From Dimorphilus gyrociliatus (lineage: Eukaryota > Animalia > Annelida): a stretch of 64,000 bases of DNA. The number at the start of each line of letters is the position of its first letter. Within the stretch, counting starts at the first letter, position 1. Below are positions 15,107 to 24,100 of this stretch, piece after piece. The position numbers and the translations under genes were made by a program. Location: contig CAJFCJ010000057.1 of assembly GCA_904063045.1 (NCBI GenBank), positions 30,439 through 94,438 of the forward strand. The letters run 5' to 3'. The notes under the pieces were generated by a model. That model did no database searches. It had not been told where the DNA came from and saw nothing but the letters and a program-made list of their open reading frames with translations.

Positions 15107-18100
15107 ATGTCTGATAAACAAAGAGAAGATATTCAACTTGCTTTAGCTAATATAATAAAATCTCCCGTTCTAAATGATCAACTATTAAGGAATTTGCCAT
15201 ATCAATATGTTAAAGATATATTAATTTCGGTAAATATTTTTTTGAATATTCAACCAAATATTGTATTTTTTTTTTCCAATTTAGGTTTTGAAGGCAACTG
15301 ACCTGAAAGATATTCTAACAGATGATGATTTAAAGTTTAAAATTGATGTATGACTGTAGTTTAGGGCCAACAGAAAACGTCGCCAAGCGAGATAATTGAA
15401 AACTAATTTTGGATTGAAGAATGATTAGGAGGACCAAAGTAGCTTTTGATTTGTAGTTAGGGAGGAGGGGATTTTCATCTAAAAATTAGGATGAAACAAT
15501 GCATTTGGAGACGTTTTCTGTCGCATCCTCATAGTTGTTATTCCTAAAAAAAATAAATGATTCTAATAATGTTAATTATGACTATTTAGACTTTCGATCA
15601 GAAAATTCAACTTTTAGAAAAGATAATTAAAGCAGTTGGTAAGTTTTTTTATTTATGCTTCTTCTTTTCATGAAAAGGAAACATTTTCTCTTTAAAGGCA
15701 AAGAATTACACGAATCAAATTTTGTTGATGCAAATGATATCGTTTCTGGGAAAAATGTCAATAAAACTCTGCAGTTTTTACTTATGTTAACTAGACTTAA
15801 CAGGATTACAGAAGATGGTAAAATGTTTTATTATTTAAATTGTTATATATTGTAGGAATAGTTGATTTTTCTACTTTTGAAGAGTGGATGCAATAGTCAA
15901 TTATCCCTATGTCTATCTATCCTCAAAACTTATATTTTTCTTGTTTCTTTCAAATAGAAAAGAGTGAACTAAAATTAGGTTCTGAACAACCTATAGAAGT
16001 TGAAATTGGCTCTAACATAGAAAATAAACATATAGTACAAAGAAACAATATGCCATTAAAATTATTGTTCAGTAAAAGTTTAGAGGTTAAAAAAACAATT
16101 TTGAATAATTTTTGAATAAAGAAAAACAATTATATTTCATTTATTGTAACTTATAGAATCCCGTATATAAAGTCACTGAAAACAAGAAAACTTTTCAAAT
16201 TAATTCAATAACATTGGAAGATGTAGACTTCTTAAATGATTACTTTTTTTGTTTAATCTTTCAAATTAAAGGAATAATTAAAGAATTTGATGAAGTAACT
16301 ATAATTTTTTAAAGAATGGCAGTATTTTAAATGAAATCAATTATATTTTGTCTTTCACAGTTACCATGGATACCCCATTCATCTAAAATTACAAATTGCA
16401 AAAATATTACTGATTGGGCAGTATTTTGGACAAGCAAATCAGAAAAACAAACATTTTTGAACAAATCAAAAACATTGAGAGCGGTAGACTTAAAAGAAAA
16501 AAAATACAAATATATTCATTTTTCTTCATTTTGTTTTTAGGTTAATACTTTTGCTGGATGTAATTCTTTGAGCACTTGGAATAATGAAAACTCTGCAAAA
16601 AGTAGGTTTAAGACACTTAAGAATTCGACTCGGATAGAGTAGTCATATATTTATAATCTCACTTTGTCTCTTTCTCCAGCTCAAATTGCTTCTGACGGAT
16701 CATATTGGAATGATAAAAAGGCTGTTATAATTCATTTTCACAGCTTATATAAAGATAAAGAACAAAAAGGATCTTATGATAGAATATTCCAGAGAATTAA
16801 TTTTGAATCTTTAATGATAAATCAAAAAATTGAATATTGTACAAATGTTTTAAATTATTGGAAAGTAAAAAATTGGACATTTTATGATTGTTACGAAGTA
16901 AGATACAAGTTTCGTTTATCTTTTCTTCTCTCTCTCTCTGTTATATCAATTTTTATTCACAAATTTAGGATTATGTTCACCTTTTATCTCCGAAACAATC
17001 ACTTTTTATCATTCCATTCAATTTAACATGCAATGAAGAAAATCTTTCAAAATATTTCATGGATGTAATTATTGGACTTTTGCAAATGGTAAAAACTCGT
17101 TTCTTCCTTTACTATGACTATTAAATCCAAATATTTATCTGTTATAGAATTTGTGTCCAAACACTCTACCAGTTGTCATTTTTATTGGATTTGGAACTAA
17201 GATAAACGAAATAGCAGCTAAATATGCTCTAATTACAATGATTGAATCATTAATAGAGGATTTTCACGATGCTATAAGAAAAAGATCAAGGTAATTCAAT
17301 AGATTTAAAAAGGATTATTAAAGCGATAATATAGATTGTTCTAAAAATAGTATTGAAGAACTCTCCAAAATTAAATTCAATGATCAAAATAACATTCACA
17401 ACTTAGTGGCTTTAACTGAATTGTTAAAAGAATTGAAAGAAAATCTGGAGGATAATAATTCTCATATCATTTCTTTCCTTAATTATGACAATCAAAAGGA
17501 TCTTAAAGTAAAACTATTTAAATTCCTTTTTTTTTTAAAGATAGAGTTGTATTGTGATCTTTAGGACTTGGTGGAAAATATGAAAATATCATTTCAAAAT
17601 GTTACTCATAGGAAACAAAAGTTTAAAGTAGTTTTTTTTCTATTCAATTATCTTTTCCTACTTCAAAGATAGTGAAATTTGATTTTTGTTTTCTATAGTA
17701 TTCTGATGATATCATTGATAAATCTATTGCTAAAATTGAGAAAATACTTGACGAAAAGGAAGACTTTTTAACGGTAACTCAACTTATGAAGGAAATTAAT
17801 ATTGAAGGTAAGTTTTTTTTATATAGTTATTAAAATCTCTCATCTTCTCTTCACAGATCTACTTGCCCTGGACATAGATGATAAAAAAGAAAAATGCTAT
17901 GCTGAAAAGATATGTCAATTTCCATTTTTCGATGTTTTCCAACTATGTTATACTTTAGTTTGTAGTTTTATTTTTTATATTATTTATCAACGTTTGCTCC
18001 ATTTTTAAAATCCAGGGACATATAGTACTTTTGAGAAGTTTTGCTTGTGAAGAATGGTTTGTTGCCAATCCAAAATGGTTTACAAACTTGATACAAAAAT

Positions 18101-21100
18101 TGCATAACATCTCTGAAGAGTGTAATGATCGTGTAGAAGATGATTTATTCTTTTTTCGCAAGAAAACAAAAGTGTGTCAGATAGCTGAATGGTATTGTTC
18201 AACTTTTAAATTTCAATCAGTAAGTTATAAAGCTTAGAGGTGTAAAAAAAATAAAAAAGCCTCTATTAAAAAATGTATTCATTTAGGACATTTTTGAAGT
18301 ATTTTTTGGGGCAGAATTGTCATTGACCTTATCATCTACAACATTATTTTTTCCCATTCAATTATCAACTTGTGAAAAAGATATGATGAAATTAATGAAG
18401 GTAATTCTTTTTAAAAGTAAAAAGAAGTGATGATCTTTTTTTCTGTAAAAAGGATGATAAATACACTGCTAAAGTTTCGTTAATCTATAATTTGAAAACA
18501 ACACTTAATGAATGGGTTCATTGGCGAATTATCTATTATTTTCATTTCATTTTCCAGAAAGAAAATATGGATACGACTATCAGTGATCTTTATCACAATT
18601 GGATAACACTTCAATATGGACCTGTAGAAGCTTTTATTTGCTTTGATGATGCTGAATGTAAAACCATTAAAGTTTGCTGTAGGGTTTTTGAAAATGATAA
18701 TTCTCCTATTCTACTTGCAAACATTGCAAAAGAAATTGAAACTATTATTGATTATTCATTGAAAATCTCATCTGTTTATTTCTCAGTAAGCAAGATCTAT
18801 TATTATAGGCACAATATTAAATCTCTTGGTTCTTTTCTTCTTTTTTGTCTTTTATTAGAAAACTATGAAAACTCCGTGGGGAGATGAACTTGATAAAATG
18901 AAAAAAGATGACGACGACAGATACTCGACTTTAAATTTAAAATTTTGTAAGAAAACATATTCCTCTTTAAATTAACCCAATCAATTTTTTCTTGTTATTT
19001 TTTTTACAGTTAATAATTTTTATTTAAGCTTTGATCATGAGATACAAAGACATTTTTCGGTTTCATGCTCAAATAAATGTATTCTAAGAAGAGAACATTT
19101 TCTATGGAAAATGCATAAAGAGATATATCCAACTTTCAAACGTGAAATGATAGTTAAAGATGACAAAAATGAATTTACTACAATTAAAGAAAGAGATCTT
19201 TCAGATAATTCTGCTTTTGACTTTATCATGGATTTAATAAACTTCTATTCAATTACATTAATCAATTGTCAAAATTTAAAATTTGAATTAATGTAAGTAA
19301 AAAAAATCTTTAGTTTTTCATAGTTTTTCAAATGTTAGTAATCATAAGCTTTTCTTTTGGTAAAAATAGTGATAGTTTTCGAGGATATTCAATTATGTTC
19401 AATTCACAAGAAAACACAGTTAAAAGGATAAGAAAAGATAAGGAGGATAAACTGGTAGACTTTTCTCTAAATGAATATTCCATTGTAACTGTGAAACTAT
19501 TACCACAACATGGAGAATATAAGTCTTATAATATGGCTTTTTCAGTGAGTTCTGATATATTTCTTTTTTATATTTTTTGAAATATTTTTTGTTTTTTTTT
19601 GTTTCAGAGAAAAGAAATTTGTTTAAATATTTATTTAAATGATATTTCAATACTAATGTTGCCACTGGAATCTCAATCAAAAGTTATTTTTAAATTTCAT
19701 GAAGCAGATAGCAATTTGATATTTGACTTTACATATGCTCCAGTAAATATTTGTAATTATTCTCTTTATCTATTTCGTTATCTCTTTTTCTCTCCTAACC
19801 TATCAGAGACAAGAATTCAATTTTTCACATGACTCTATTGATATTGGTCAGAAGTTATTTCATAGTTTTTCTGGAGATATTGCAACTGTTGGTATGTTAA
19901 AAATTTAATTTTGGCTAGTGAAGTTGTTTTCTAATTGAAGAATTTGTATCCCTATGCCAGAGGCCATTTTACCAACAGAAAAGTTAATTTTGGTTTCTCG
20001 AATCAATAAATCATTATCACAAGATGTTAAATCAATCGAATACATCAAATTGTCATTGAAGAATGTTGAAGAAGTGAAACGCTTTTTTGCACAATACTCT
20101 AATGATGATGATAATGATCAACATAAGATATCAGGTAGGGTTCTCTTATCAAGTCTAATAGTTTACTCTACTAATAGTTGTATTTTTCTTAGAAGAGTTT
20201 CTTGGTTATTTAAATGCTTACAATTGCCAATCAGTTCCTAATCACTGGATAAAAAGTTTAATGAGTGCAAATAATGAAGATGACATACCTTTACCTGATA
20301 GAAAAGGCGTTTGTCTATTTTCCAATCTAAAATTATCCAGTAAAATATTTATTTTACTTTTTTCCTTTCGTATTTATCTGTATGTGTGTGTGTTTTTAAG
20401 CCTTTGTTAGGAAAAGCTACGGAATAACACTTTTCGAATCATCGTATCGTGGTTGGCAAAATGGGATTTTTTTCCCTCAAGAGTTGAGAAATGAGTCATT
20501 CATTTATTTAAATGAACTCATTCACTTTGATAAAATGACAGCCTATTTAATCTGTACACCTGCATCTACTACACATGATGGTCATAACAACACTCATATA
20601 ATGAAAAAATCAGCTAAAACTATTTCAAGAGTTACTTTTATGAAGGATCTTGAATTTTATATGATTTTAAAGTTGTCATTATGGTTATATTTCAATAGAA
20701 GTGATATAGTTAGTATAAAACATTAAATAAAACAAACTATTTATTGTTCATTCTACACCTAAAAGCTTGTAGACAATATTGAATCAAGTCAGCTTCAATT
20801 CTATTTTTCATTTTTGATAAATAAATATCCAGATATTGATATACTGACAACTGACCTCCAAAGTGGAAATATACAAGTTCCATTAAGTGTTCAAACAGTA
20901 TGAATATTTAATGTCCTTTTTGTTTCTTTTTAATTTACTCTATTAATAAAATATTTTTCACCAGCTTCTTAAAGAATGTGTACAAACTAAATTGGGTACA
21001 GTTTCTAATCCAGATTCTGGGCGCTTTTTGTGCTATTTTCACAACAAGAACTTGAAAACTACTAACAAAGAAAGGGATAAGTTTCTAGATTTAATATCAG

Positions 21101-24100
21101 AAGACAAGATACAAACTGTGGAAAATGATATTCTAAAATTTGATTATTGCCAACAGTAAATTAATTGTTTTTTAAATCCAGATAATAAAAGATTGTTTTT
21201 CAGTTTCAAACTTTTAACAAAATGGTATATTACTAATGACGAATATAATATAGACGGAAGAGAAGGAGGAGAAGATGAACTATTTGGAAGAGTAAAAAAA
21301 CTAAACAGATTAAAGTCTATAGCCCTCAAAAATTGCAATATTTCTACATTTGCGACAAATATTGACAGGCTATCATCCAGTCTCGAAAATTTGCATATAA
21401 TGAACAGTCCAATTACGACAATCTCTCCTTCAATTGGAAAATGTTCCTTAGTAACAAATTTACATTTAAACGATCTTTTATTGACTGATTTACCAATGGA
21501 AATGTCTAATTTATTCCATTTAAAGTTTTTAAACCTGGGTGGAAATTTATTTAAAAGCGTTCCAAGAGTGATTAATCAACTGAATTGTTTGAAATTTTTG
21601 CTTTTACCTGCTATTAATTTCAAACCATTTCATTTAAATATCAATCAATCTTCCATAGTAACAATTGATGAATGGAAAAATGTATATACTACACAATATT
21701 CCCGACTGAGCCATATCGGATTTGATGAAACAAATATGCTAAAGATTTTTAAAGATGCTGCTACTGCAACCAGTAGTGATACTTTAACAACTACAGATCA
21801 AATTGAAGATCTTCACGCAACACTTTATAAGACACTACCAAGAATCTCATCATGGAGTGTTTTAAATAATATTAGTAAACAATCTTACAAGACTCTTACC
21901 TTTTTGGATTTAAAATATCAGAGTTTTAAGATTTTGGATGACAGTATTGGGTATTTGGAAAAATTAGAAAGTTTACATTTATCTTTCAATTTACTTCTTG
22001 AAGAGATAAGCCCTAAAATTGCTGATCTTCCTTTAAATCAAATACTTTTTTATAATTGTCCATCATTGAGAACACCTCCTAAGGTAATGGCTAGGTCAAG
22101 TGCAAAATACATTAAAAACTATATGAGAGCCCTAAGTAAGGGATTTGTGTCATGTAAAAGAACAAAGTTGATGCTAGTTGGCCTTGGCGGCGCTGGAAAA
22201 ACAAGCCTAGTAAATGCACTAACAGAAAGTAATCAAGAGAAAAGCGAAAAAATAGTGAAAAATACTCAAATTACAGATGGAATTTGCATTAAAAAATGGT
22301 TTATTAACTCTATTGAATATTCAATATGGGATTTTGCAGGACAAACAGTCTATTACAACACTCATCAGTTTTTTTTGTCAAATAGAGCTGTTTATTTTTT
22401 AGTTTGGAATGTGAGATCTGGAGAAGAGCACGCTGGTCTAGAATTCTGGTTAAATTCTATAAAATGTCATGCTCCTAAAGCTCCAATTTTCATTGTAGGA
22501 ACTCATATTGACCAGGTGCTCTTAATACAATTACAATAGGCCTATTAATTAAATATGGTTAATATCCAATCTTAGGTTGAAAAAAGTGAACTACCAGTAA
22601 AGAAATATCAAAAGAGATATGCACAAATAAAAGGATTTTACTATGTTTCTTCTCTTACTAAATTGGTTGCAAATTTATTTTTTTTACTTTTTCATTTTAT
22701 AGTTTGACATTTATAAACAAAAAACAAACTTTTAAACTGTACAAACAGGGTTTCAAAGAATTAGTTGATGCTTTATTAGAAATAACTTCAAAAGAAAAAT
22801 ATATGAACGAAAAAATACCAAGTCTTTGGTTAGACTTCGAAGAAGCTCTGTTTAAGTAAGTAAATATAAAAAATAATTAATATACACTTTAACCTTTGAC
22901 CCTAAAACAGAGAAAGTAAAACTTTAAATATAATTTCAATTGATAAAGCTATGGATAAAGCTTTCCACTGTGGTATAGTTGAAAAAGCTGAGGTTGATAT
23001 TAAATGTTTTTGCTTTACTTATCTCGTTCATTCATGTTCCTTGTACAGTTTTACCAAGCTGTTGAATTTCTTCATCAGTTGGGATCTGTTCTGTACTTTC
23101 AAAATGAATATTTAAGGAAAAAAATTATTATAAATCCTCAATGGATTGTTGATGTAATGGCTTGCATTGTTTCAGTTCATATAAATCCAATTAAAGTTTG
23201 TAACTTTTTAAAATTTTTCATATGTAGAAAGGATTTTTTGTTATTTTTTAATAATGTAGAATGGAAAGTTGTTACATGATGACTTGAGTAAAATTTGGCC
23301 AGAAGAAACGTACTCTAAAGATCTTCATCAATGGCTTTTACGTTTAACTGAAGAGTTTGATTTGACATTTTGCTTAAAAAATGAAATGGCTAGTTTAGTT
23401 CCCTGTCTTCTTCCTGATGTTGAACCAGACGTAATAATTTAATAAAATATTAATTAATAATTGATATATTTTCATTCTGTCATAAAAAATATTACTCAGG
23501 ATTTTTGGGAAGAAGAACCTTTAAAGGAAAATGAAGTGCAATCTAAGATGATGCTCAATTTTGATTATCTGCCATTTGGTCTTTTTAACAGAGCTCAAGT
23601 TAGACTTTATCAGTTTGGCGATGAATCTCTAATCTGGAAATCTGGCTCTTTTTTGAGAAAAAATGGTCACAGGGGTATTTTGAAGAAAACCAGGTAGGGC
23701 TTTTTGTTTAATATTATCATTTCTATCATTTACCAATATATATATATATATATAATTGTTAAGCTTATCAAGCATTCTTATGGAAGTTAGAGGATTAAAA
23801 CCTGAAAATGTACTTTTTCTTGTCCATGAAGTATTTGAAACATTAATTGCAGAGTCATTTGAAGGAGTTCAATTTGATTTTAAAGTACCTTGCCCTGAAT
23901 GCATTTATCAAAATTTGCCAGATCCTAGTATGGTCAAAGCAGTGAGAATAAGAAGGGCACTACAGTTAAAAATTCCTTTTATGCAATGCACTCGCAATTT
24001 CCATACTGTGTCAATAACTCAACTTCAAAGTAAATTTGCCTATACAAAGCTTTTTATAGTAAAATAATGACGTTATCTGTTCACAATTAGATATGTTACC

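What the first reader, a model, noticed from the sequence alone, without database searches (positions are those of the whole stretch)
16680..18790. Hidden second, degenerate Roc-COR module in the N-terminal half of the Roco gene
Seen in my spliced translation: NWTFYDCYEDYVHLLSPKQSLFIIPFNL..PNTLPVVIFIG aligns with the true Roc YSIWDFAGQ..THQFFLSNRAVYFLVWNV..PKAPIFIVG. GHIVLLRSFACEEWFVANPKWFTNLI aligns with COR GSVLYFQNEYLRKKIIINPQWIVDVM. FGAELSLTLSSTTLFFPIQL and KVCCRVF..LLANIAKEIETII follow in COR order. No P-loop or DxxG is present, so this would be a pseudo-GTPase. Established: Roco proteins are regulated through COR-mediated dimerisation. Inference: an intramolecular pseudo-dimer of inactive plus active Roc-COR, an arrangement I have not seen described.
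Basis: partly seen in the sequence, partly recalled or inferred. Interest (0 to 1): 0.72.

Follow-up and report, generated by a model that had tools for sequence, protein, structure and literature searches.

The report
Dead second Roc-COR module in Roco
A giant annelid Roco-TIR protein carries, upstream of its working GTPase switch, a second full copy of that switch (Roc-COR) that has lost every GTP-binding motif. The same hidden copy is present in relatives from molluscs, brachiopods, nemerteans and amphioxus, so it is an old, conserved and apparently undescribed feature of this family.

Summary
The window is from Dimorphilus gyrociliatus, and the gene is DgyrCDS14632 (P0151, 2553 aa). One spliced transcript contig joins the exons at 16680-18785 to the LRR-Roc exon at 21204 onwards.

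Residues 279-765 of the protein form a Roc-like G domain followed by COR-A and COR-B:
- **Sequence evidence.** A 17-sequence profile of this N-terminal module aligns end to end with a 37-sequence profile of true Roc-COR (hhalign E 4.3e-18, 428 columns; reversed control 0.43).
- **Structure evidence.** An AlphaFold2 model built from N-module sequences only (pLDDT 71.5) has only Roco structures as its top 21 Foldseek hits. It matches LRRK2 Roc at Z 10.6 and C. tepidum COR at Z 10.9.

By sequence alone the Roc half is only marginal (E 0.003; for Dimorphilus alone 0.26, no better than its control). That half rests mainly on the fold and on collinearity with the COR part.

No copy has a P-loop or DxxG, so it is a presumed pseudo-GTPase. 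Pfam sees nothing there in this protein.

The module is also present in at least eight paralogous loci of this genome, and in amphioxus, Lingula, Haliotis, scallops, Bulinus, Sinanodonta and Tubulanus.

The proposed intramolecular pseudo-dimer remains untested. An overlapping window of this scan noted the same gene (s1-172110).

The parts
16709..17609 (+). Pseudo-Roc: a G-domain-like fold without G1/G3 motifs. It covers P0151 residues 279-496 and is encoded by exons 16680-16897, 16969-17088, 17148-17290, 17351-17507 and 17565-17627. It includes a helical insert between beta5 and beta6 (about residues 402-462).
   Evidence: The AF2 model has the order b1-a1-b2-b3-a2-b4-a3-b5-a4-(insert)-b6-a5. 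VIA-align gives LRRK2 Roc 7lhw Z 10.6, rmsd 3.1, 147 aligned, and SR-beta, Arf, Ras and Rho at Z 9.7-10.9. hhalign of the Roc part alone gives E 0.0031 against a reversed control of 0.46. No GxxxxGK[ST] or DxxG is present.
17699..18370 (+). COR-A-like domain. It covers P0151 residues about 503-668 and is encoded by exons 17699-17807, 17857-17957, 18016-18219 and the first part of 18287-18400. It carries the hallmark G-hIvLl....W-v-NPkWf motif.
   Evidence: hhalign of the Dimorphilus N-module against true Roc-COR gives E 4.8e-7 over 223 columns, covering Roc alpha5, COR-A and the start of COR-B. The core motif alone gives E 8e-5 against a reversed control of 0.87. C. tepidum COR 3dpt matches at Z 10.9 over model residues 238-491.
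18371..18891 (+). COR-B-like domain. It covers P0151 residues about 669-765 and is encoded by the end of exon 18287-18400, exon 18558-18785 and the start of exon 18859-18946. It carries the W..G.v.Q.GPVE motif shared with the N-modules of other phyla.
   Evidence: hhalign A3 vs A5 gives E 3e-12, A5 vs A2 gives E 1.1e-13 through to the PCP.C end of COR-B, and A7 vs A2 gives E 4.3e-18. The model has a strands-plus-helix arrangement at residues 417-479.
18453..18557 (+). In-frame 35-aa segment (DDKYTAKVSLIYNLKTTLNEWVHWRIIYYFHFIFQ) that lies inside the intron of the observed transcript and of the annotation. It is probably an alternative 3' splice site. It would encode the first strand and helix of the COR-B-like domain.
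   Evidence: The transcript contig skips 18401-18557. A tblastn HSP of paralog P0001 runs through this stretch. The translation has no stop. Hand alignment with an AG acceptor at 18451-52 gives 18 of 35 residues identical to P0001 638-672. The corresponding part of true COR-B is shown.
21204..22515 (+). Context: the exon encoding the LRR and the active Roc of the same transcript, with P-loop GLGGAGKT, WDFAGQ and THID.
   Evidence: Pfam Roc PF08477 E 6.5e-23. The motifs are listed. The exon lies in the same contig as the pseudo-module exons.
22746..24031 (+). Context: the exons for true COR-A and COR-B.
   Evidence: Pfam COR-A and COR-B hits. tblastn of P0151 against the window.

Best explanation
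Exons 16680-18891 encode a complete but catalytically dead copy of the Roc-COR supradomain: pseudo-Roc, COR-A-like and COR-B-like. It lies N-terminal to the LRR-Roc-COR-TIR part of the same polypeptide, DgyrCDS14632 of the annelid Dimorphilus gyrociliatus. The inferred architecture is MIP-T3-type CH domain, Cys-containing LRR, pseudo-Roc-COR, beta-sandwich, LRR, Roc-COR, TIR.

Shown here:
- the module is transcribed in one mRNA with the active module;
- it is homologous along its whole length to Roc-COR;
- it is predicted to adopt the Roc-COR fold;
- it lacks the P-loop and DxxG;
- it is conserved in paralogs and in orthologous proteins of molluscs, a brachiopod, a nemertean and amphioxus. It therefore predates the protostome-deuterostome split and has been kept under selection.

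Inferred:
- the pseudo-Roc does not bind or hydrolyse GTP in the canonical way, so it is a pseudo-GTPase;
- the retained COR part works as a protein-protein interface, because COR-B is the dimerisation element of Roco proteins (established for C. tepidum Roco and LRRK2);
- the module either pairs in cis with the active Roc-COR or supplies a second COR interface for higher-order assembly, coupling the GTP state of the active Roc to clustering of the C-terminal TIR effector domains.
For: - **One transcript.** A single spliced contig links 16680-18785 to 21204-22338 with GT..AG joints throughout. The translation has no stop and equals P0151.
- **Sequence homology.** Profile-profile comparisons give:
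  - the Dimorphilus N-module against true Roc-COR, E 4.8e-7;
  - the N-modules of other phyla against true Roc-COR, E 1.1e-13;
  - Dimorphilus against the other phyla, E 3e-12 over 423 columns, including pseudo-Roc from beta3 onward;
  - the combined 17-sequence profile against Roc-COR, E 4.3e-18 over 428 collinear columns, from beta1 to the end of COR-B. The reversed control gives 0.43.
- **Structure.** The AF2 model was built without templates and without true Roc-COR rows, and has pLDDT 71.5.
  - Foldseek ranks 1-21 are all Roco structures: LRRK1 8e05 at 1.4e-7, CtRoco 6hlu at 2.7e-7 and LRRK2 8fo9 at 7.4e-7.
  - VIA-align gives LRRK2 Roc Z 10.6, CtRoco COR Z 10.9, and whole LRRK2 residues 1330-1815 Z 11.
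- **Pfam.** COR-B passes its gathering score in the amphioxus N-module (27.9 against 27).
- **Motif loss.** No P-loop or DxxG is present in any copy.
- **Distribution.** The module is found in at least eight loci of the own genome, and in Branchiostoma, Lingula, Haliotis, Pecten, Ylistrum, Bulinus, Tubulanus, Sinanodonta and Magallana.
Against: - Pfam finds no domain in P0151 262-1110.
- For Dimorphilus sequences alone the Roc half scores E 0.26-0.3, no better than a reversed control at 0.17. Even the combined Roc-only comparison is marginal (E 0.0031).
- The first AF2 run, with 6 paralogs, was unusable (pLDDT 41.7). The second is of moderate confidence and weak around the P-loop/alpha1 region (pLDDT below 50 at model residues 22-35).
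- Generic G domains (SR-beta, Arf, Ras) match the pseudo-Roc about as well as LRRK2 Roc does. The assignment to Roc specifically therefore rests on its position before COR and on collinear homology.
- The observed isoform lacks 35 aa of the COR-B-like domain.
- Nothing here tests nucleotide binding or any interaction.
Confidence: 0.85

Rival explanations
1. The COR-like part is real, but the region before it (residues 279-496) is not a Roc derivative. It would be some other Rossmann-like or flavodoxin-like alpha/beta domain, for example a TIR-like domain, that AlphaFold renders as a G domain.
For: Sequence evidence for the Roc half is marginal (E 0.0031 combined; 0.26 for Dimorphilus alone against a reversed control of 0.17). 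The beta1 motif VIIHFHSLY superficially recalls TIR box 1. Model confidence is low around the P-loop equivalent. The language-model atlas search gave no usable hit.
Against: The model has the antiparallel beta2-beta3 hairpin and the b1-a1-b2-b3-a2-b4-a3-b5-a4-b6-a5 order typical of G domains, not the strictly alternating order of TIR. G domains match at Z 9.7-10.9 with rmsd about 3 A over 140-170 residues. The significant alignments include Roc alpha5 and, with the deeper profile, run collinearly from beta1. The amphioxus copy keeps Roc-like strings such as RVVIVGD...AQLLVSLL and KVPRAP.
Confidence: 0.08
2. The architecture is an artefact. Two adjacent genes, a decayed Roco pseudogene upstream and an active Roco downstream, would be merged by read-through transcription or by assembly of the transcript contig.
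For: The only expression evidence is one assembled contig from one run of unrecorded library type. A contig is not a single molecule. One paralogous locus (C49) carries in-frame stops.
Against: The reading frame is open and uninterrupted across 15 or more GT..AG junctions between the two modules. An independent annotation gives the same fusion (P0151). The same N-module-plus-Roc-COR order is found in single proteins of at least five phyla. Conservation of motifs such as W..G.v.Q.GPVE indicates selection on the protein.
Confidence: 0.04
3. The module is a Roc-COR relic that survives only as an inert structural spacer. It would have no role in regulating the active Roc-COR or the TIR domains.
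For: All G motifs are lost. Sequence divergence between phyla is extreme (11-16% identity to P0151). The observed isoform even drops part of COR-B. The complex prediction gave no support for COR-COR pairing, which is not evidence either way.
Against: The module has been retained for more than 500 My in several phyla and in every Dimorphilus paralog examined. Family-specific conserved motifs occur in both COR-A and COR-B.
Confidence: 0.2

Closest known systems
Roco proteins with a single Roc-COR tandem: human MFHAS1/MASL1, LRRK1, LRRK2 and DAPK1, and C. tepidum Roco (PDB 3dpu, 6hlu)
   Same: The C-terminal half of this protein is a standard LRR-Roc-COR (Pfam Roc, COR-A and COR-B). The N-terminal module has the same domain order and predicted fold. 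Its best structural matches are these very proteins.
   Different: The reviews and searches used here describe Roco proteins as having one central Roc-COR tandem (PMC6337361). Wherever 'two Roc' or 'two COR' domains are mentioned, the two protomers of a dimer are meant. Here two modules sit in one chain, and the first lacks G1 and G3.
PseudoGTPases (G-domain folds that have lost nucleotide binding or hydrolysis, for example the pG1/pG2 domains of p190RhoGAP, or CENP-M). This comparison rests on my own knowledge of the class.
   Same: A G-domain-like fold with degenerate or absent G motifs, embedded in a multidomain signalling protein.
   Different: This one is a paralogous copy of the active GTPase in the same chain and keeps its COR partner domain. 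Nucleotide binding was not measured. No paper in the searched library uses the term together with Roco.
Animal LRR-Roc-COR-TIR proteins with catalytic TIR domains (bioRxiv 10.64898/2026.04.20.719644)
   Same: The same effector logic: a Roco switch fused to TIR. That paper's Figure 3 legend defines Roc, COR and LRR among the domain abbreviations of the TIR proteins it draws. The species with cADPR-producing TIRs include a mollusc and a lancelet.
   Different: The text read here does not mention a second, degenerate Roc-COR module. The figures themselves could not be inspected.
Pseudoenzyme-enzyme tandems in one chain, such as JAK JH2 pseudokinase with JH1 kinase (own knowledge; analogy only)
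   Same: A dead duplicate of a catalytic module is retained N-terminal to the live one and could regulate it in cis.
   Different: A different fold and chemistry. Cis regulation is established for JAKs but is purely hypothetical here.

Membership tests
Roco family (whole gene) | Roc G domain followed directly by COR | tested here: met
   In P0151, Pfam gives Roc E 4.8e-22, COR-A E 7e-31 and COR-B E 2.7e-22. GLGGAGKT, WDFAGQ and THID are present.
Roc-COR module (the N-terminal copy, residues 279-765) | COR-A and COR-B homology | tested here: met
   hhalign E 4.8e-7, 1.1e-13 for orthologous N-modules and 4.3e-18 combined. CtRoco COR 3dpt matches at Z 10.9, rmsd 4.3, 208 aligned.
Roc-COR module (the N-terminal copy) | G-domain fold immediately N-terminal to COR-A | tested here: met
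   The AF2 model has G-domain topology. LRRK2 Roc matches at Z 10.6, rmsd 3.1. This rests on a predicted model of moderate confidence, not on an experiment.
Roc-COR module (the N-terminal copy) | Significant sequence similarity of the Roc part to Roc | tested here: inconclusive
   E 0.0031 against a reversed control of 0.46 for the combined profile. E 0.26-0.3 against 0.17 for Dimorphilus alone.
Roc-COR module (the N-terminal copy) | Functional G motifs: G1 GxxxxGK[ST], G3 DxxG, G4 [NT]KxD | tested here: not met
   G1 and G3 are absent from all copies. Only a G4-like TKIN is present (TKID in one paralog). It is therefore filed as a degenerate derivative, not as an active Roc.
Roc-COR module (the N-terminal copy) | Passes Pfam gathering thresholds for Roc, COR-A or COR-B | tested here: not met
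   P0151 262-1110 matches no family at E up to 1. The amphioxus ortholog's N-module passes COR-B (27.9 against 27 bits).
PseudoGTPase class | No nucleotide binding or hydrolysis | not testable with these tools
   Inferred only from motif loss. It needs binding assays.
COR-mediated dimer (cis pseudo-dimer hypothesis) | Contact between the pseudo-COR and the true COR | tested here: inconclusive
   The complex prediction returned no verdict and did not use the alignments. It is not evidence either way.

The most novel reading that the evidence does not exclude
The dead Roc-COR pairs in cis with the live Roc-COR through the COR-B surfaces. This would mimic the nucleotide-free or GDP-state homodimer of canonical Roco proteins and hold the protein in an auto-inhibited monomer. 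GTP loading of the live Roc would break the pseudo-dimer, free both COR-B surfaces for assembly in trans, and so drive clustering and activation of the C-terminal TIR domains. Alternative splicing of the 35-aa COR-B segment (18453-18557) would tune this lock.
Probability: 0.2. Interest if true: 0.82.

Novelty: new variant of a known kind. Interest (0 to 1): 0.62.

Why it matters
How COR-mediated dimerisation couples to the GTP cycle of Roco proteins, LRRK2 included, is still debated (PMC6337361). A natural protein family that hard-wires a dead Roc-COR next to a live one offers a built-in heterodimer-like system for studying that coupling.

The finding also defines a conserved bilaterian Roco-TIR subfamily whose N-terminal half is currently unannotated. 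Pfam sees nothing there. It adds a candidate pseudo-GTPase to a family where I found none described.

On the practical side, a profile built from alignment A7 can annotate this module in other genomes.

Tried and rejected
- **Pfam on exon pieces and on P0151 262-1110:** no hit.
- **Profile of the Dimorphilus N-module against PDB sequences:** only coiled-coil noise.
- **ESM Atlas feature search with P0151 275-500:** no usable hit.
- **First AF2 run, with six Dimorphilus paralogs:** pLDDT 41.7, unusable for the module.
- **An MSA built from single-exon rows of paralogous loci:** MAFFT misaligned it, so it was dropped.
- **Word-index protein searches with the N-module regions of P0001, P0004 and P0010:** only close relatives were found. 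The wider distribution came from scanning proteins already fetched.
- **One protein, P0166:**
- **Complex prediction of true COR against pseudo-COR:** no verdict, score 0.00, the alignments were not used and the partner's fold was uncertain. This is neither support nor evidence against binding.
- **Intron positions:** by inspection of the exon boundaries they do not coincide between the pseudo-module and the true COR exons. This gives no support for a recent internal duplication and was not pursued.
- **The conserved DFxGQ-like string (IKFNDQ, MDFNGQ):** considered as a possible displaced G3 motif. Rejected, because it lies in the helical insert between beta5 and beta6.
- **Joined spliced model:** assembled only inside scripts to check the frame. 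It was never typed or sent to a search tool. All searches used exon references or the database protein P0151, which is identical over the finding.


Full report
**What the locus is.** The window is AT-rich eukaryotic DNA with short introns. A search with the LRR-Roc exon, followed by alignment, showed that database protein P0151 (DgyrCDS14632, Dimorphilus gyrociliatus, 2553 aa) is the product of this locus. Its residues 270-754 are identical to my spliced translation of 16680-18785. tblastn places its exons between 15107 and 26287. The window is contig C57:30439-94438 of the own genome. Pfam finds the following in P0151:
- a MIP-T3-type CH domain at residues 10-111;
- LRR at 1197-1430;
- Roc at 1491-1606;
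- COR-A at 1631-1770;
- COR-B at 1793-1929;
- TIR_2 at 2142-2214;
- nothing between residues 112 and 1196.

**Checking the observation.** The run found for this stretch holds spliced contigs. One 5161-nt contig carries every exon junction of the finding, all GT..AG. It continues without a break into 21204-22338, the exon that encodes the LRR and the active Roc. The evidence is an assembled contig from one run, not single molecules. The frame is open across all junctions. The quoted peptides are present, and no P-loop or DxxG occurs upstream of residue 1496.

**Handling of the spliced model.** It was assembled only inside scripts to check the frame. Searches used exon references or P0151 by reference.

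**Is it a Roc-COR? Sequence evidence.**
- With the six annotated Dimorphilus paralogs (A3) against 37 true Roc-COR segments (A2), hhalign gave E 4.8e-7 over 223 columns.
- The COR-A core alone gave E 8e-5 against 0.87 for a reversed control.
- The Roc half was not significant with Dimorphilus sequences alone: E 0.26-0.3 against 0.17 reversed.
- The decisive step was scanning the large Roco proteins already fetched with a Roc-COR HMM. Many of them carry a second, weak Roc-COR hit in their N-terminal halves.
- These proteins come from Branchiostoma, Lingula, Haliotis, Pecten, Ylistrum, Bulinus, Tubulanus and Sinanodonta, and Magallana.
- Their N-modules (A5) match true Roc-COR at E 1.1e-13, through COR-A and COR-B to the PCP.C end.
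- They match the Dimorphilus N-module at E 3e-12 over 423 columns, from pseudo-Roc beta3 onward.
- Pfam's own COR-B model passes its gathering score in the amphioxus N-module.
- The combined 17-sequence profile, with P0151 270-760 as first row (A7), aligns with true Roc-COR at E 4.3e-18 over 428 collinear columns. The alignment runs from beta1 (KKAVIIHF with TKLMLVGLGG) to the end of COR-B. The reversed control gives 0.43.
- The Roc part taken alone remains marginal: E 0.0031 against 0.46.

**Structure evidence.**
- AF2 with only the six paralogs failed (pLDDT 41.7).
- With A7, which has no templates and no true Roc-COR rows, the model of residues 270-760 reached pLDDT 71.5. It shows the G-domain order b1-a1-b2-b3-a2-b4-a3-b5-a4-(helical insert)-b6-a5, followed by a helical/winged-helix part and a strand-rich part.
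- Foldseek ranks 1-21 against the PDB are all Roco structures: LRRK1 at 1.4e-7, C. tepidum LRR-Roc-COR at 2.7e-7, LRRK2 at 7.4e-7, and RocCOR 3dpu and M. barkeri Roco2. Rag and small GTPases follow.
- VIA-align gives LRRK2 Roc Z 10.6 (rmsd 3.1, model residues 11-230), C. tepidum COR Z 10.9 (rmsd 4.3, model residues 238-491), and LRRK2 1330-1815 Z about 11 over the whole model.
- Generic G domains score about as well as Roc on the first domain. 'Roc' rather than 'some G domain' therefore rests on position and collinear homology.

**Degeneracy.** None of the N-modules, in any paralog or phylum, has GxxxxGK[ST] or DxxG. The positions are occupied by conserved but different strings: HF.S.Y after beta1 in Dimorphilus, and an acidic residue without the glycine at G3. 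A G4-like TKIN remains, and is TKID in one paralog. Calling the module a pseudo-GTPase is an inference from motif loss. It was not measured.

**Distribution.** The own genome holds the module at eight or more loci: C57, C63, C13 (three places), C49, C138, C61 and C40. With the other phyla, this makes the module an ancient, conserved part of a bilaterian LRR-Roc-COR(-TIR) subfamily, not a peculiarity of this gene.

**Mechanism.**
- Established: COR-B is the dimer interface of Roco proteins, and the C. tepidum protein cycles between dimer and monomer with the nucleotide state (PMC6337361; PMC5714945, abstract).
- Inferred: a retained COR without a working Roc most likely serves as an interaction surface. 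Relatives of these TIR domains in animals are catalytic (bioRxiv 10.64898/2026.04.20.719644).
- I could not test this. The single complex prediction gave no verdict. I put the cis pseudo-dimer at about 0.2.

**Literature.** Searches for pseudoGTPase with Roco, for two, second or duplicated Roc or COR domains, and for Roco with Dimorphilus found no description of two Roc-COR modules in one chain. The 'two Roc' or 'two COR' hits whose context I read refer to the two protomers of a dimer. This library is incomplete, so absence is not proof.

**Verdict.** The finding is real, and its central interpretation holds. It is a new variant of a known kind: a Roco subfamily with a cryptic dead Roc-COR module. 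The scan had noted the same gene from an overlapping window (s1-172110).

Noticed in passing
window 22576-22665: A 90-nt in-frame exon (VEKSELPVKKYQKRYAQIKGFYYVSSLTKL) encodes beta6 and G5 of the true Roc. It is conserved in paralog P0001 but missing from the annotated model P0151, which joins HIDQ directly to GFKEL. The transcript contig ends before this point, so usage is unknown.
   Followed up: partly
window 20401-20708 and 20766-20897: Two exons are present in the spliced transcript contig but absent from the annotated protein P0151, which jumps from about 20311 to 20965. The transcript form keeps the frame open.
   Followed up: partly
window 18453-18557: A 35-aa in-frame stretch lies inside an intron of the observed transcript. 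It is 18/35 identical to paralog P0001, where it is annotated as coding. It is probably an alternative 3' splice site affecting the COR-B-like domain.
   Followed up: partly
window about 19240-19742 (P0151 861-980): An all-beta domain lies between the pseudo-COR and the LRR. In a low-confidence model it resembles galectin/SPRY-type jelly rolls (LEC-6 Z 8.0, rmsd 3.3). That is too weak to name a fold.
   Followed up: partly
L019:1988-2368 (G000 C63, locus of P0001/DgyrCDS14676): The genome carries the pseudo-Roc exons (KKALIIHFHSLY..., DYVHLVSPKRAIFLIPFN...). The annotated model P0001 replaces them with unrelated sequence, so this looks like a gene-model error.
   Followed up: partly
L016 (G000 C49:129500-134000): A paralogous N-module has in-frame stop codons inside otherwise well-conserved exons (INF*FLI, DVIN*SIE). 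It may be a pseudogene.
   Followed up: no
L013 and L014 (G000 C13:1014500-1019500 and 990500-995500): Two copies of a paralog about 24 kb apart give identical N-module exon translations. This points to a recent tandem duplication.
   Followed up: no
P0156 residues 763-862 (Branchiostoma lanceolatum): The amphioxus N-terminal COR-B carries a TIR_2-like insert (25.8 bits, below the gathering score of 28) between its strands and its C-terminal helix.
   Followed up: no
window 15107-15822 (P0151 10-111): The N-terminus of the same protein is a MIP-T3/IFT54-type CH-like domain (PF10243, E 9.3e-14). It is followed by Cys-containing LRR-like repeats before the pseudo-Roc.
   Followed up: partly
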